A stretch of DNA of 64,000 nucleotides. Origin: Octopus bimaculoides. Lineage: Eukaryota. Shown here piece after piece: positions 8,613 through 25,742 of this stretch. The position numbers and the translations under genes were made by a program. How positions within the stretch are numbered: position 1 is the stretch's first letter; every line of letters starts with the position of its first letter. The notes beneath the pieces were generated by a model that had not been told where the DNA came from, searched no databases, and saw only the letters and a program-made list of their open reading frames with translations. The stretch covers positions 58,995,120 through 59,059,119 of the forward strand of contig NC_068989.1 of assembly GCF_001194135.2 (NCBI RefSeq). The letters run 5' to 3'.

Positions 8613-9200
8613 TCAATGTCCTCCCATTGACCATGCACCTTCCATCCGCCACACAGAGAAAGCATAACTTAGTCTCTCGTGTGCCATATAGCTACACGAT
8701 GCCATTTTATTGTCCGTGTCATCACTACGAAGTACCTGATATAAGAAATCAATATACCGCGCTGCAAGCTTTAGTGTTTGTATTTTGCTCAATTTATCAG
8801 ACGGCAGGGTCGGAATGATTTTGCGAAGTTGGGCAAATGCTTCATTTAATGACTGCGTACGTTGACGTTCACGTACATTTGCTAAAACTCTTTGATTCTG
8901 GATATCTTCGACGGACTGAGGATTTTTTCGGCGTGCCTTTCGAACAGCTGAAGAGTGAGATTCACATGTTACAGCAAGGGAATGGACAGGGGTCAACTTT
9001 AACGATTCCGGAGAACCAACGTCACCACAAAGACCATTCTTCGTATAACCACGTTTTCGCTGTATTCGCATTTTTTCTGTTTCGTCATCACTGCTGGGTA
9101 TATCCTGATTAGACGTTTGATGATGGTGAAGATGATGGTGATGATGAGTGGACAGAGATAAAGAATCCCCATCTAGTAGAGAGTGATGCTCGGGTATCAT
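8613..9200 (-). CDS. twist: Twist bHLH transcription factor, uninterrupted CDS (195 aa)
   Basis: b[58 protein letters not shown] plus the Twist WR motif [16 protein letters not shown]. The ORF track starts at a TTG (9206). The first ATG is at 9200-9198 (aaaATG), with an in-frame TAG just upstream. TGA stop at 8615-8613. Confidence 0.98.
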
Positions 9201-17384: not shown

Positions 17385-17707
17385 CCAGCAAGAAGAAGTA
17401 AACATCGTCTTCATTTCTAATATGTAATAGTTCAAGTGTTTAATGATTAATTAGTAAAGAATGCATGTGATATTTTTAGCATACTGGCTCACCAATCCTC
17501 CAATGAGAAAGTTACTTCTATGAATTTATAGAGGTATTGCCTTTAGCCTAACTTTTAAGTGTAATAACTGTCTTCACAGTGTCATTACAGATATTGTTTA
17601 TCGTACATTTTACACAGTACAGTTCTATATTTAAGAGATGAGGAATTATGTACATTATTTATATTATTTACATTTGATGGACATTTGTCCTCATCTTGTT
17701 TGTTGTT

Positions 17708-17753
17708 AACACAACGTTTCGGCTGATATACCCTCCAGCCTTCATCAGGTGTC
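17708..17753 (-). ncRNA. Minimal type I hammerhead ribozyme, intact core
   Basis: GACAC-CTGATGA-A-GGCTGG agggtata TCAGCC-GAA-ACGT-T-GTGTT: intact CUGAUGA and GAAA, helix II 6 bp, palindromic helix III, GUU site. Confidence 0.85.
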
Positions 17754-17958
17754 TTGGGGAAATTTCGAACCTGGATTCTCATTCCTAAGGTATTTTTCGA
17801 TGTTATTATTATTAGAATCCAGGTCACTGTCTGGAATTGAACTCGGAATCTTGGGGTTAGTAGCCCACGCTCTTAACCTCTACGCCACGGCATATGGCGT
17901 AGAGGTTAAGAGCGCGGGCTACTAACCCCAAGATTCCGAGTTCGATTCCAGGCAGTAA

Positions 17959-18017
<59 letters not shown>

Positions 18018-18100
18018 GTAATAATAATAATAGTAATAATAATAATAATATCATCGAAAAATACCTTAGGAATGAGAATCCAGGTTCGAAATTTCCCCAA

Positions 18101-18145
18101 GGCACCTGATGAAAGCTGGAGGGTATATCAGCCGAAAGGTTGTGC
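18101..18145 (+). ncRNA. Minimal type I hammerhead ribozyme, helix III mutated
   Basis: GGCAC-CTGATGA-AAGCTGGAGGGTATATCAGCC-GAA-AGGT-T-GTGC; mirror copy of 17708-17753. Confidence 0.75.
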
Positions 18146-19822
18146 TAACAACAAACAAGATGAGGACAAATATCCGTCAAATGTAAATAATGTAAATAAT
18201 GTATTTTACACAGTGTAATGACATTCGTGAAAGTCATAACAGATAGAATACATATACCTGGATTCCATCCTGTAGTTGTGCCATCCCCACCCACTGCATT
18301 GTATCAAGACCAAAGTGCATAAAGTCTGCAAGACCAATGCAACATGTAGATGTAGATCAAGATGAGCAAATGTCACGATAATATCTTGAACAGCTAACCA
18401 AGAATCCCAAGCGTCAGCTCCTTTTCAACAGTACTGCACTATATCCTAACCAAAATTACCTGTTTCCTTTTTATATTTGCCTTTGTCTAAATTAACTGTG
18501 ATTGTGGTCATATATAGAAATGACTCAACAGTATTCGGTGGGTTGAAAAGCTCATTGTTGTCAATTACGTCAATACAGTATTACAGACGTACGTTTCAAT
18601 GGTTTGTTATACTGACTTGGACCTGCATATAGTTTTGGGTACCGATATAAAACTAATAATAAGTTCATCTCTTTAAATATTATTTCTACAATTCCAGAGA
18701 TGACTCTAAATCAATACAGTCCCTCTGCTATTGAATAATACAATTAACTCATCTTTAGGAACTTAAATAGGGTACGCAAGCACATATATGTAAGTATATA
18801 TGTATGTTGTTATGTAGGCGTGTTTGTAAGCAACAGTGAAGGATTGCGCTACCAATACATACATGTCCAGAATGATTATACTTTTCGCTCCTCGCAGTTA
18901 ATAATGTAATTGAGAAGATAAGTTTTTTATGATCGTTATAATCGATTAACACTCTGTAAAGCAGTGCGTGCTCCACTTTGATCATTGTCCAGTAGCTGAA
19001 ACTTGTTAAGGAATAAGACAATAGAGTGTGCAGCTGTGACTGCAACGTCCATGAGTTTGTGCGATTGTACATGTTTAAACACAGTTGTATGTGCATGAAC
19101 ATGTGTGCGTATGTTTATACCTTCATGAATATTCACATGTGTGTTTATATTCACACACGTATATGAAATTACATATTGGTAAGCTCAAGTATGGACACAT
19201 AGCTAATTGATGATACACCTGTGCAGTCAGAATATGTACTTATAACCATAATTGTCACTGATACTTTAAGATTAACAATGTTTCTTCTGCATATTGTGTA
19301 CAAAGAACCGATATTTTCCTTTGTAAACGCGCGTACATTTAATGATGTGTGTCGCTATTCAAGTACATGTGCCATGGTTATCTAGCAATGTGCTGTAACA
19401 TTCAGTCGAATTTGTCTGTTTTTCCGCCAATTTTTCTAGCTTCTGACTCCCCGTACCTCCACAGTGTATATAATTCGTCGTAACTTACTCCCTTCCTACA
19501 CAGTCAGCAATTATTTACATCGAACATATCGGGCAGTAATTTCCCTAACAACTTCCCAACAGGTATCAACATGCTTACATCCACAATTCTACCTCAACAA
19601 TGCAAAGTTGGCTCGGATTCAAACTCAGCGAAGAAGAGAAAGAAATAAAAAAGATAAAAAAAAAAGAAGCAGAAACTCCGCAAATAAATTAATAGTTGAT
19701 CCGGAAGCCTTGCTATCTGGTACCTATTTTCCCTGAATTTGAATAATTACAAACATTGCTGTTCTACCTAAGATTTCTAGTTTTAGGACACCACACAGAC
19801 GCAGGCACGCTGGTACGCAGAC

Positions 19823-20954: not shown

Positions 20955-21348
20955 TGATGTGTTGTTGTTGGCACTCCGTCGCTTACGATGTTGAGGGTTC
21001 CAGTTGATCCGATCAACAGAACAGCCTGCTCGTGAAATTAACGTGCAAGTGGCTGAGCACTCCACAGACACGTGTACCGTTAACGTAGTTCTCGGGGATA
21101 TTCAGCGTGACACAGTGTGACAAGGCTGACCCTTTGAATTACAGGCACAACAGAAACAGGAAGTAAGAGTGAGAGAAAGTTGTGGTGAAAGATTACAGCA
21201 GGGTTCACCACCATCCCCTGCCAGGAGCCTCGCGGATCTGTAGGTGTTTTCGCTCAATAAACACTCACAACGCCCGGTCTGGGAATCGAAACCATGATCC
21301 TATGACCGCGAGTCCGCTGCCCTAACCACTGGGCCATTGTGCCTCCAC
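20955..21348 (-). mobile_element. tRNA-derived SINE family C
   Basis: Minus-strand head gtggaggcacaatggcccagtggttagggcagcggactcgcggtc...ggtttcgattcccagacc (A- and B-box) and an (AAC)n-type tail gccaacaacaacacatcaacc. Confidence 0.85.
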
Positions 21349-21760
21349 ATCGGTTGATGTAGTAGTGCAAGAAAAGTAGCATCAAAACATAACATCACAA
21401 TGGTCTAGAGGAAATTCTTTAGTTCCTCAACCTTCTTGACTGGATACAACTGTCGAATTTTGTATGGAAATATATATTTTCCACCTCTGTTCAGTTATGA
21501 TTAATCAAGAAAATATTCTTCATTTCGTTTCTTTGCATTGTAAACATTGAATCAGTACAAAGAGACAAGAATAGAATACAGAGACGGCTAGGGGAGGTAA
21601 ATTTATGTTTATCTACTTCAAACTTGGCAAACTAACACACTTCCATATATATGAATATAAACACGCACGTACATACGCGCGCGCGTATGTATTTATATGT
21701 ACTTACATACATATCCATTATACTAAATGGATGTGTGCATATGTAATATTTATCTATTTA

Positions 21761-24644: not shown

Positions 24645-25742
24645 TTAGATAAGGCCGGTTTATGGGATTGCCCTGGGTTTCACGTCCATAAAGCGCTTAG
24701 CCAAATGAGAGGCTAACAAACATCAACATAGCCTTCTGTCACCCACCCATTGTGTTCAAAAACCTGGTGAAGGGTGTTAGCAAGAGGATCTCGAACCTTT
24801 CCTCCAGCCAAGTGATTTTTGATGCAGTAGCCCTCTACTATAACGAGGCTGTATCTGCTAGCAGATTTAAGAACCGTATCTCCTACATGCCGGGCTCCAA
24901 CATCCGTAGACGGAAGCGTCGCAGAAATGTCATTTGGTTTCCCTCCCGCTTCTCTATTAAAGTATAAAAAAACATCTGTAGGTAAGATATTCCTTACGTT
25001 AATAGACAGCCATTCCTCACGTTCACATAGGTACGGACGCATTTTCAATAGGTACAACATTAAGGTCTCTTTTAGTTGTTCCCCCAATATTAAGAGCATT
25101 CTAGTTAGCATCGCTTGACCACGAGCGGAGGCAGGATGCTCATGCAGGGAAGCTCATCAGGCAGGATGCTAATCCCTGCAGAATGCTCATGCAAGGACCG
25201 CAACAGATGCCCAGTGAGAGGCTACTGCGAAACCAAGGGAATCATCTATGAAGCTGATGTACTGGCTGACCCTAATAGCAGCAGCAACAGCAGCAACTTT
25301 CCCATCGGCTACTACAATAGCAGGGTTGACAGTACCAATAGTAGCAGCAGCAGAGACACGACCAGAACCAGCGGCAGCACCATCGCCAACGATAACAACA
25401 ATAACAACATCAACGACAACAATGGCAGTATCCCTAACGAAATAGCAACAGAAAGATCGCCAATGATATATATAACAACAGTGACAGCGCCTCCATCAAC
25501 GACGATTACCATAACAACAACAGCACCATTACCAACACCAGTAGTTATGGCACTAACACCATTGCCACTTCCAATGACGCCAACACCAACAGCACTAGTA
25601 TCAACAAAAGCAGTAGCTGGGATCCGATGATACGCTGTAAAGATAAGCGCTTTATGAGCGTGAAACTCAGGGTAACCCCATAAACCAGCCTTATCTAATT
25701 TAATATAATATACTGCTCTACAACTTAGTGTGTGCTTCTTTT
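24645..25742 (+). mobile_element. Penelope-like element (PLE), 5'-truncated, with inverted terminal repeat
   Basis: RT C-terminus FCHPPIVFKNL...SKRISNLSSSQVIFD...YYNEAVSASRF, VIWFPSRFS...VGKIFLTLIDSH...IFNRYNIKVSFSCSPNI, then CSCKDRNRCPVRGYCETKGIIYEADV. Termini 24645-24699 and 25644-25698 are inverted repeats. Confidence 0.9.
25619..25679 (+). ncRNA. Type I hammerhead with long helix II (PLE 3' terminus)
   Basis: GGGAT-CCGATGA-t-acgctgtaaag ataagcg ctttatgagcgt-GAAA-ctcaggg-TA-ACCCC; U4 changed to C. Confidence 0.72.

What the first reader, a model, noticed from the sequence alone, without database searches (positions are those of the whole stretch)
17607..18214. tRNA-headed SINE with a hammerhead 3' end, inserted with Penelope-like geometry: candidate PLE-mobilised ribozyme SINE
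Seen: two head-to-head copies of a roughly 240-nt unit made of a pol III A/B-box tRNA head, (AAT)n, a minimal type I hammerhead and an A-rich tail. They are flanked by a 12-bp direct repeat (ATTTTACACAGT), and only the left arm carries an extra 32 nt (17619-17650) beyond the shared 3' end. Established: SINEs normally borrow LINE 3' ends. Minimal type I HHRs with palindromic helix III, inverted terminal copies and a short (about 30-40 nt) one-sided tail are hallmarks of Penelope-like element termini. tRNA-related HHR repeats are known from schistosomes (SM-alpha). Inference: this is a SINE family that parasitises PLE reverse transcriptase. I do not know of one described in cephalopods.
Basis: partly seen in the sequence, partly recalled or inferred. 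Interest (0 to 1): 0.9.

Follow-up and report, generated by a model that had tools for sequence, protein, structure and literature searches.

The report
Octopus SINE with Penelope-type ribozyme tail
This is an old, inverted double insertion of a short octopus retroposon that joins a tRNA-type promoter to the ribozyme-bearing end typical of Penelope-like retrotransposons, which suggests that these SINEs are copied by Penelope enzymes rather than by LINEs.

Summary
Window 17607-18214 (Octopus bimaculoides, upstream of a Twist-like gene) carries two head-to-head copies of one element inside a 10-12 bp target-site duplication. Each copy has pol III A and B boxes at tRNA spacing, an (AAT)n run, a body with an open ATG frame, a minimal hammerhead and an AT-rich repeat end.

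The hammerhead shows the published marks of Penelope-like-element (PLE) min-HHRs. It is intact in three independent copies from two species.

The one-sided 32 nt is not a one-off. An unrelated O. sinensis copy ends at the same nucleotide, and other copies stop 32 nt earlier. That is the optional PLE "tail".

All three copies with a readable 5' end have an inverted repeat there. Each arm in the window holds sequence the other lacks, so two cDNAs were made, one from each target strand.

The insertion predates the O. bimaculoides/O. sinensis split. O. sinensis later deleted most of the palindrome.

Still inferred:
- No partner PLE was found.
- tRNA models do not recognise the head.
- Only four independent loci were available.
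- A LINE-type tail is not excluded.

Verdict: a real element and a new variant of a known kind. Mobilisation by a PLE is probable (about 0.6).

The parts
17607..17618 (.). Left copy of the target-site duplication, ATTTTACACAGT.
   Evidence: family D2. The duplication encloses both arms.
17619..17650 (-). The 32-nt distal 'tail' of the left arm (RNA sense CATAATTCCTCATCTCTTAAATATAGAACTGT). It carries the 3' strand of the terminal stem.
   Evidence: Absent from the right arm. The same sequence and the same last nucleotide occur in the unrelated O. sinensis copy at L002 10124-10156.
17619..17712 (-). The 94-nt region 3' of the predicted cleavage site. It holds a 9-bp stem, AGAUGAGGA (17688-17696) pairing with UCCUCAUCU (17636-17644), and the (TAAATAATR) repeats. 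The proximal terminus lies at 17651 and the distal terminus at 17619.
   Evidence: Fold z-score -2.99, with 0 of 200 shuffles as stable. The same stem is predicted in the L002 copy.
17708..17753 (-). Intact PLE-type minimal hammerhead: GACAC|CUGAUGA|A|GGCUGG-8 nt-UCAGCC|GAA|ACGU|U^GUGUU. Predicted cut between 17713 and 17712.
   Evidence: Descriptor hit, alignment, pair counts, and the features listed in PMC4209133.
17754..17802 (-). Body upstream of the ribozyme. The ATG at 17782-17780 opens a frame that runs to the element's end.
   Evidence: The frame is open in all four copies. A given frame stays open in 1.4% of shuffles.
17803..17814 (-). (AAT)4 microsatellite of the left arm.
17815..17887 (-). 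Promoter head of the left arm. It starts at the A box and lacks the 7-nt leader. Its B box is decayed (TTCAATTCC).
17888..17894 (+). Central 7 nt (cGGCATA). This is the 5' leader of the right arm and the junction between the two cDNAs.
   Evidence: The same GGCATATGGCGTAG 5' end occurs in the L002 copy.
17895..17962 (+). Promoter head of the right arm: A box 17895-17905 (TGGCGTAGAGG) and B box 17939-17949 (AGTTCGATTCC).
   Evidence: spacing 44 nt, as in tRNA genes.
17963..18050 (+). (AAT)29 microsatellite of the right arm.
18051..18100 (+). Body of the right arm, with the ATG at 18072-18074.
18101..18146 (+). Decayed hammerhead of the right arm. Changes: G10.1>A, C15.2>G, and helix I pair A-U>G-C.
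18147..18202 (+). 3' region of the right arm. It ends at the proximal terminus (...AAATAATGTA) and has no tail.
   Evidence: The same boundary is kept in the O. sinensis ortholog at L003 235-291.
18203..18214 (.). Right copy of the target-site duplication.
   Evidence: The O. sinensis ortholog reads ACTGCGTAAAAT on the other strand.

Best explanation
This is a non-autonomous retroposon family of Octopus, about 250-350 nt long.

The 5' module is a tRNA-gene-type pol III promoter: a 7-nt leader, then an A box and a B box. The 3' module of about 150-185 nt looks like the pLTR/ORF-start junction of a Penelope/Poseidon-type element. It has an ATG-opened frame, a dimer-type minimal hammerhead, a stem-loop, and two alternative 3' termini 32 nt apart.

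Proposed mechanism (inferred):
1. Pol III transcribes the unit.
2. A PLE RT-endonuclease binds the 3' module in trans.
3. It nicks both strands of an AT-rich target about 12 bp apart. Here both nicks read T^GTA, give or take 1 nt.
4. It starts reverse transcription internally at either of the two sites.

At this locus both nicked strands were extended. The bottom strand primed at the proximal site and ran to the RNA 5' end, giving the right arm. The top strand primed at the distal site and stopped 7 nt short, giving the left arm. The two cDNAs were joined end to end. The result is one insertion with inverted arms, one tail and one target duplication.

The hammerhead is probably retained as part of what the PLE machinery needs. 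A monomer cannot form helix III, and cleavage would separate the promoter from the RT start sites.

Shown: the anatomy, a single-event insertion, recurrence in other loci and species, and the age.
Inferred: pol III transcription, PLE dependence, the priming scheme and the role of the ribozyme.
For: Anatomy and target duplication.

Organism: (O. bimaculoides, GCA_001194135.2).

In the two O. sinensis copies with a complete ribozyme (a third fragment has lost the core) the only changes fall at N7 and in loop 2.

The distal end ...GAACTGT is identical in ObimL and in the L002 copy. The proximal end ...AAATAATG(T/C)A is seen in ObimR, in its O. sinensis ortholog and in the L003 copy. In the PAc Penelope-like element (Poseidon of Anolis carolinensis) the optional 30-40 nt tail is likewise the stretch between two internal RT start sites about 85-92 nt past the HHR cut. 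Here the distances are 62 and 94 nt. The PAc protein cuts and extends both strands.

An inverted 5'-truncated partner at the 5' end is a described PLE trait. It is seen here in 3 of 3 copies with a 5' end: about 280 nt in the window, about 70 nt in L002 and 12 nt in L003.

The right arm has the 7-nt leader that the left arm lacks, and the left arm has the tail that the right arm lacks. Neither arm can therefore be a copy-back of the other.

The terminal stem-loop is significant. The ATG-opened frame resembles PAc, where the ORF starts inside the HHR.

PLEs are present and recently active in Octopus, and most octopus SINE families are unclassified.
Against: - No PLE ORF or pLTR sharing the 3' module was found in the window or in about 210 kb of octopus DNA. 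A peptide search with the module's frame returned only an exonised copy.
- Only four independent loci were available.
- No tandem (pLTR-like) arrangement was seen.
- The proximal end is a variable-copy 9-nt repeat after a small hairpin, which also resembles the tails of stringent LINE/SINE pairs.
- Rfam hammerhead and tRNA models do not score the element.
- The head does not fold as a cloverleaf.
- The single compensatory pair in helix I is not significant with n=4. It is probably post-insertion chance, because private changes are balanced between the arms.
- In PAc the HHR is dispensable for insertion in vitro.
Confidence: 0.6

Rival explanations
1. It is an ordinary LINE-dependent tRNA-type SINE whose body happens to include a captured fragment of a PLE pLTR. 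The (TAAATAATR)n end and the small GGACAAAUGUCC hairpin would be an L2/CR1-type recognition tail. The inverted arms would come from LINE twin priming. The 32 nt would be an extended RNA 3' end.
For: The copy number of the 9-nt terminal repeat varies between 2 and 3 among copies. That is the pattern LINE RT slippage gives at 3' repeats (my own knowledge). SINEs are modular. LINE RT fragments lie in the same window.
Against: No LINE-like sequence shares the tail in the window or in the loci. Two unrelated copies end at the same distal nucleotide 32 nt past the repeat, with no terminator there. All three 5' ends carry inverted repeats, which is unusual for LINE-driven SINEs. The intact ribozyme core in three copies would have no explanation.
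Confidence: 0.2
2. It is not a SINE at all. These would be 5'-truncated pieces of an autonomous PLE (a terminal pLTR region). The 'tRNA head' would be part of that PLE's untranslated region, or box-like sequence there by chance.
For: Dispersed min-HHRs were originally read as truncated PLEs, and pairs 100-700 bp apart on opposite strands were noted. tRNA models do not recognise the head.
Against: Two unrelated full-length copies start at the same nucleotide (GGCATATGGCGTAG), 7 nt before an A box, and the B box follows at tRNA spacing. That is what a transcript made from an internal promoter would give. There is no coding sequence upstream.
Confidence: 0.12
3. The palindrome arose at the DNA level, by two independent insertions, by a fold-back duplication, or as an assembly artefact.
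For: Long palindromes can arise by replication errors. The assembly contains N gaps.
Against: A single 12-bp duplication encloses both arms, and neither arm has its own duplication. The arms differ by 5-8% and in (AAT)n length. Each arm has unique terminal sequence. The O. sinensis ortholog keeps the same right-arm/flank boundary. A similar inverted design is seen at another locus in the O. sinensis and O. vulgaris assemblies.
Confidence: 0.04

Closest known systems
Minimal hammerheads of Penelope-like elements, including the thousands of dispersed copies in metazoan genomes (Cervera & de la Pena 2014, PMC4209133)
   Same: The core is the same. There is no helix III loop and 15.2/16.2 are palindromic, so the ribozyme is dimer-dependent. 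[quoted passage not shown] Pairs on opposite strands a few hundred bp apart have been reported.
   Different: Here the motif sits in a short unit with its own pol III-type promoter head and (AAT)n, not in the pLTR next to an RT/GIY-YIG ORF. Dispersed copies were previously assumed to be truncated PLEs.
Poseidon PLE of Anolis (PAc), studied in vitro (Frangieh et al. 2024, PMC11167929)
   Same: The HHR overlaps the start of an open frame. RT start sites lie tens of nt downstream in a stem-loop. Two start sites define an optional 30-40 nt tail. Both target strands are cut and extended. The targets are AT-rich.
   Different: PAc is autonomous and arranged in tandem. No sequence similarity was tested. 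The distances are 62 and 94 nt here against about 85-92 nt in PAc.
Non-LTR retrozymes of animals (de la Pena et al. 2020, PMC7229834; Li et al. 2026 preprint, 10.64898/2026.07.22.740005)
   Same: They are short, non-coding, HHR-bearing elements thought to depend on PLEs and to derive from pLTRs.
   Different: Retrozymes are tandem repeats with canonical type I HHRs and are expressed as circRNAs. This family is dispersed as monomers or inverted pairs, has a min-HHR and carries a pol III head.
Sm-alpha of schistosomes (my own knowledge, cited as Ferbeyre 1998)
   Same: It is a SINE-like repeat with pol III boxes and a hammerhead.
   Different: Sm-alpha has a canonical HHR with helix III. No sequence comparison was made, and it belongs to a different phylum.
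Non-autonomous PLE derivatives without small-RNA heads: MRC1/Chlamys in Chlamydomonas (PMC8557442) and short Penelope elements in butterflies (PMC6685494)
   Same: They share 3' ends with, or depend on, PLEs and form complex insertions.
   Different: No tRNA-type promoter head has been described for them. MRC1/Chlamys lack canonical HHRs.
Classical LINE-dependent tRNA SINEs of octopus, annotated as tRNA-Core/tRNA-Deu (PMC8967140); a plain example lies at window ~20960-21350
   Same: A/B-box head, short length and a target duplication.
   Different: They have a single orientation, no hammerhead and no alternative tail.

Membership tests
tRNA-type SINE | Internal pol III A and B boxes at tRNA-gene spacing. 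| tested here: met
   TGGCGTAG(A/T)GG and AGTTCGATTCC lie 43-44 nt apart in ObimR and in the L002 copy. Shuffles give 0.37 such pairs in 209 kb.
tRNA-type SINE | The head is recognisably derived from a tRNA, by sequence or cloverleaf. | tested here: inconclusive
   ARAGORN at default settings calls nothing and calls the head only at 70-80% thresholds. The Rfam tRNA model gives no hit at E<=10 on 83-84 nt. There is no cloverleaf, z +1.18. Other evident SINE heads in the loci are not called either.
tRNA-type SINE | A short, non-coding, dispersed multicopy element with 5' truncations and target duplications. | tested here: met
   Four independent loci in about 130 kb of non-overlapping Octopus DNA (about 210 kb fetched, including the O. 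vulgaris ortholog and the Argonauta and metagenome loci). One is 5'-truncated and one is internally deleted. A 12-bp duplication is seen here.
tRNA-type SINE | The 3' end is shared with an autonomous partner. | not testable with these tools
   No octopus TE library or genome-wide search was available. No partner lies in the DNA that was fetched.
PLE-type minimal hammerhead | Conserved core CUGANGA ... GAAA ... UH. | tested here: met
   Intact in ObimL, the L002 copy and the L003 copy. These are the only descriptor hits in 173 kb.
PLE-type minimal hammerhead | No loop 3, palindromic 15.2/16.2, an extra nucleotide between 9 and 10.1, and a G10.1-C11.1 pair. | tested here: met
   GAA-ACGU-U, a bulged A, and G-C closing helix II.
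PLE-type minimal hammerhead | Helices I and II supported by pairing or covariation. | tested here: inconclusive
   97.7% of cells are paired and one pair has a change on both sides, but 138 of 500 shuffles reach this value with only 4 sequences.
PLE-type minimal hammerhead | Self-cleavage, as a dimer or assisted by protein. | not testable with these tools
   This needs an in vitro assay. The monomer MFE fold pairs part of the core.
PLE-type minimal hammerhead | It lies in the pLTR of an element with an RT and GIY-YIG ORF. | tested here: not met
   There is no such ORF next to any copy.
Hammerhead families of Rfam | A match to a curated covariance model. | tested here: not met
   No hammerhead hit at E<=10 on 1.2 kb or on 81 nt. 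This is expected if the models require helix III.
PLE insertion signature | An inverted 5'-truncated copy abutting the 5' end. | tested here: met
   In the window, the left arm lacks 7 nt. In L002, the inverted head lacks about 26 nt. In L003 there is a 12-nt inverted repeat with a 7-nt spacer.
PLE insertion signature | An optional 30-40 bp tail at one end. | tested here: met
   The tail is 32 nt. It is present in 2 ends and absent in 3.
PLE insertion signature | Partial tandems forming pLTRs. | tested here: not met
   No tandem copy at any of the four loci.
Non-LTR retrozyme | Tandem 170-400 bp repeats, each with a canonical type I HHR, expressed as circRNA. | tested here: not met
   No tandem units. 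The HHR is the minimal type. Expression is not testable here.
Stringent LINE-dependent SINE (L2/CR1-type tail) | A 3' stem-loop plus short tandem repeats shared with a LINE. | tested here: inconclusive
   The repeat end and the small hairpin are present. No LINE with this tail was found in the sampled DNA.

The most novel reading that the evidence does not exclude
A sizeable share of the 'unclassified' SINEs that make up about a tenth of octopus genomes may be pol III-driven parasites of Penelope-like elements. That would be the first SINE class not dependent on LINEs. Its minimal hammerhead, with the ACGU helix III palindrome, might serve as an RNA-RNA dimerisation handle that lets the SINE RNA pair with a PLE RNA, or with a second SINE RNA, inside a dimeric RT-EN complex. 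This would explain both the conserved but monomer-inactive ribozyme and the two-cDNA inverted insertions.
Probability: 0.15. Interest if true: 0.85.

Novelty: new variant of a known kind. Interest (0 to 1): 0.62.

Why it matters
SINEs are defined by their dependence on LINEs. PLEs are a third class of retrotransposon whose integration mechanism is only beginning to be worked out. A compact element of about 300 nt would be a natural minimal substrate for studying PLE target-primed reverse transcription, because it carries all of the following:
- the PLE recognition module
- both RT start sites
- a readable record of double-strand priming: two arms, one tail and one duplication

It would also reassign part of the very large and mostly unclassified octopus SINE load to a different engine. 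And it would give the thousands of 'orphan' minimal hammerheads in animal genomes a concrete carrier.

If the partner proves to be a LINE, the element is still a clear case of a ribozyme-bearing PLE fragment recruited into a SINE.

Tried and rejected
- **Rfam.** Scans of the region and of sub-regions gave no hammerhead or tRNA match. The 42.8-bit MIR167 'hit' is only the centre of the palindrome.
- **ARAGORN.** No tRNA at default settings.
- **Exact-pattern scans.** Metagenome, viral and prokaryote-genome collections were scanned with 32-nt and 23-nt ribozyme patterns and gave 0 hits.
- **Six-frame peptide query.** A chimeric query meant to fish out copies called as ORFs returned one hit, an exonised O. 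sinensis copy. That hit opened the route to loci L002 and L006.
- **Protein searches with window ORFs.** Searches with LINE-like and RT-like ORFs from the window gave only short contigs from other organisms, so they did not help sample octopus DNA.
- **RT-like fragment at 43.4-44.7 kb.** I suspected a PLE, but long relatives show only a weak RVT_1 match and no GIY-YIG. I do not call it a PLE.
- **Argonauta Twist locus.** It aligns only within about 1.5 kb of the gene and has no copy of the element, so it gives no empty site.
- **Copy-back (snap-back) origin of one arm from the other.** Rejected, because each arm has terminal sequence the other lacks.
- **The A-U to G-C double change in helix I as proof of selection.** Rejected. 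It is not significant, and private changes are balanced between the arms.
- **Literature.** Searches, including raw sequence strings, found no description of this family.
Full report
**What is there.** The window is Octopus bimaculoides. The 195-aa Twist-like ORF at 8613-9200(-) is found exactly on chromosome CM046609.1 of GCA_001194135.2. Between 17607 and 18214 there are two inverted arms. Arms 17651-17814 and 18040-18203 are 164 nt and 95% complementary. Arms 17803-17887 and 17895-17979 are 85 nt and 92% complementary, with 7 nt between them. ATTTTACACAGT occurs directly outside both arms, at 17607-17618 and 18203-18214. Neither arm has a duplication of its own, so the whole 584 bp entered in one event. 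One base at each junction is ambiguous, which makes the duplication 10-12 bp. The arms differ by 5-8%, and (AAT)4 faces (AAT)29. This excludes a mirror-image assembly artefact. No other copy lies in the 64 kb window.

**The unit, read in RNA sense from the left arm and the other copies.** It consists of:
- a 7-nt leader (GGCAUA+U)
- an A box, TGGCGTAG(A/T)GG
- a B box, AGTTCGATTCC, 43-44 nt later
- an (AAT)n run
- a roughly 50-nt body with an ATG
- the ribozyme
- 62 nt ending in (TAAATAATR)2-3
- optionally, 32 nt more

The box pair at tRNA spacing is far above chance: 0.37 such pairs are expected in 209 kb of shuffles, and nearly all real hits are SINE heads. The head is not recognised as a tRNA by ARAGORN at default settings or by Rfam, and it does not fold as a cloverleaf. 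Other obvious SINE heads in the loci are not called either. I therefore call it a pol III-type promoter head. Descent from a tRNA is unproven.

**The ribozyme.** The left arm reads GACAC|CUGAUGA|A|GGCUGG-AGGGUAUA-UCAGCC|GAA|ACGU|U^GUGUU (17753-17708). It has the full catalytic core. Helix I is 5 bp and helix II is 6 bp, closed by G10.1-C11.1. [quoted passage not shown] There is no loop 3, only the palindrome ACGU. These are the features that Cervera and de la Pena list as emerging from PLE min-HHRs, which can form helix III only as dimers. A descriptor built on those rules hits only copies of this element in 173 kb on both strands: the window's left arm and two independent O. sinensis copies. 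Shuffles give 0.02 hits. In the two O. sinensis copies the only changes within the 46 nt fall at N7 (U>A) and in loop 2. The exonised copy's peptide (D>E) shows the same N7 change. The right arm has lost G10.1 and C15.2, and it carries an A-U>G-C double change in helix I. With four sequences the pair statistics are not significant. Private substitutions are evenly split between the arms relative to the family consensus. I therefore read the arms as identical and consensus-like at insertion, and the double change as chance. Rfam's hammerhead models do not score the motif. This is a limit of models that expect helix III. It also means the ribozyme call rests on the descriptor and on the literature, not on a curated model.

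**Other copies.** No genome-wide search was possible. A six-frame peptide query found an O. sinensis gene model whose first 36 codons are a copy of the element. Through cluster members I fetched that locus from O. sinensis (L002) and O. vulgaris (L006), and the Twist loci of O. sinensis (L003) and Argonauta (L004).
- L002 9768-10156 holds a full copy that begins with the same GGCATATGGCGTAG and ends ...TCCTCATCTCTTAAATGTAGAACTGT. It therefore includes the '32-nt extra' and stops at the same nucleotide as the window's left arm. It is preceded by an inverted, 5'-truncated head plus (ATT)n.
- L003 1575-1996 is a copy truncated within the head. It ends at the proximal site (...AAATAATGCA) and has a 12-nt inverted repeat with a 7-nt spacer at its 5' junction.
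- L002 5980-6105(-) is an internally deleted copy.

So the 32 nt are the family's distal terminus. The family has two termini 32 nt apart. All three readable 5' ends carry an inverted repeat.

**Age.** In O. sinensis the orthologous site keeps the right flank, one copy of the duplication (ACTGCGTAAAAT) and 57 nt of the right arm's end, with the same arm/flank boundary. It then jumps to a point 23 nt beyond the left duplication, across a TGT(T)A microhomology. The insertion therefore predates the split of the two species, which PMC13282606 puts at 13-33 My. O. sinensis later deleted about 570 bp of the palindrome. Flank identity between the species is about 92%, consistent with the 5-8% divergence between the arms.

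**Mechanism.** Craig et al. describe PLE insertions as 5'-truncated, often with an inverted 5'-truncated copy abutting the 5' end and a 30-40 bp tail at one end. Frangieh et al. show the following for a purified Poseidon protein:
- Both target strands are cut and extended.
- Reverse transcription starts internally at two adjacent sites in a stem-loop, about 85-92 nt past the HHR cut.
- The optional tail is the stretch between those two sites.
- The ORF starts inside the HHR.

Here the termini lie 62 and 94 nt past the predicted cut. The intervening region forms a significant stem-loop whose 3' strand is in the tail (z -2.99). An ATG 70 nt before the cut opens a frame to the element's end in all copies (1.4% of shuffles for a given frame).

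At this locus the right arm owns the 7-nt leader and the left arm owns the tail, so neither arm is a copy-back of the other. The simplest reading is two cDNAs, one from each nicked strand, joined by an end-to-end template jump. Reconstructing the empty site gives nicks at AAT^GTAC on the bottom strand and AGT^GTAA on the top strand, 12 bp apart (inference, +/-1 nt). I infer trans-mobilisation by a PLE RT-EN, with pol III supplying the RNA. Internal initiation would suit pol III read-through transcripts that have ragged 3' ends. The ribozyme would cut the promoter away from the RT start sites, and it is monomer-inactive. It is therefore more likely kept as part of the recognised fold, or for RNA pairing, than for processing.

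**What is missing.** No PLE or LINE sharing the 3' module was found in the window or in the fetched loci. The RT-like debris at 43.4-44.7 kb could not be classed as a PLE. The repeat end with variable copy number is also what stringent LINE partners produce. That rival keeps about 0.2. PLEs are abundant and recently active in Octopus, and 893 of 900 recently active SINE families in O. vulgaris are unclassified. A partner is therefore plausible but unshown.

**Novelty.** The following are already known:
- dispersed min-HHRs (2014)
- HHR-bearing non-autonomous PLE derivatives, i.e. tandem retrozymes (a 2026 preprint argues for a pLTR origin)
- headless non-autonomous PLEs
- Sm-alpha

I found no description of a pol III-headed, dispersed SINE with a PLE min-HHR and tail, in cephalopods or elsewhere, in the searchable library. 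Repbase and Dfam could not be consulted. I rate it a new variant of a known kind, with interest 0.62.

Noticed in passing
window 38388-38467: (TAACCC)7 directly abuts (TAGGGT)6. These are two telomere-type hexamer arrays placed head to head, about 260 bp upstream of a LINE-RT-like ORF at 38725-39120(+).
   Followed up: no
window ~20960-21350 (-): A different A/B-box SINE (TGGCCCAGTGG ... GTTTCGATTCC) with a long body. It has ordinary single-orientation geometry, a 9-bp direct repeat ACATCAACC at both ends, and no hammerhead.
   Followed up: partly
window 43400-44650 (-) and 25115-25300 (+): Decayed RT-like reading frames (FDIVDFYPSV, YRDDTL, FLDVTLDL...) are followed by a CxC..P..G.C motif. 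The same motif plus IIYEADV occurs at 25.1 kb. Relatives reach 806 aa but show only a weak RVT_1 match and no GIY-YIG, so the class of element is unsettled.
   Followed up: partly
L002 10001-10108 (O. sinensis CM016884.1): RefSeq models of LOC115224785 (a TNFR-like protein) start at this SINE's ATG and use a GTAAGT inside its repeat end as the splice donor. The true start is probably the downstream signal peptide MKAPAS..., so the SINE supplies a first exon or an annotation artefact.
   Followed up: partly
L003 223-300 (O. sinensis ortholog of window 17580-18230): O. sinensis has deleted about 570 bp of the palindrome, together with one duplication copy and 23 nt of flank, across a TGT(T)A microhomology. 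This is an example of the instability of long inverted repeats.
   Followed up: yes
window 17845-17938: Rfam MIR167 scores 42.8 bits here (gathering score 100). The only reason is that the head-to-head junction forms a near-perfect hairpin. If transcribed, such inverted SINE pairs would give long hairpin RNAs.
   Followed up: no
window 8613-9200 (-): An intact single-exon Twist-like bHLH gene. The O. sinensis and Argonauta hians proteins fall in the same 90%-identity cluster. Non-coding sequence aligns with Argonauta only within about 1.5 kb of the gene.
   Followed up: partly
window 53187-53552 (-): An ORF resembling the C-terminal end of a Tc1/mariner-type transposase (...NSPDCSSLDYYVW...). 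It has no Pfam hit.
   Followed up: no
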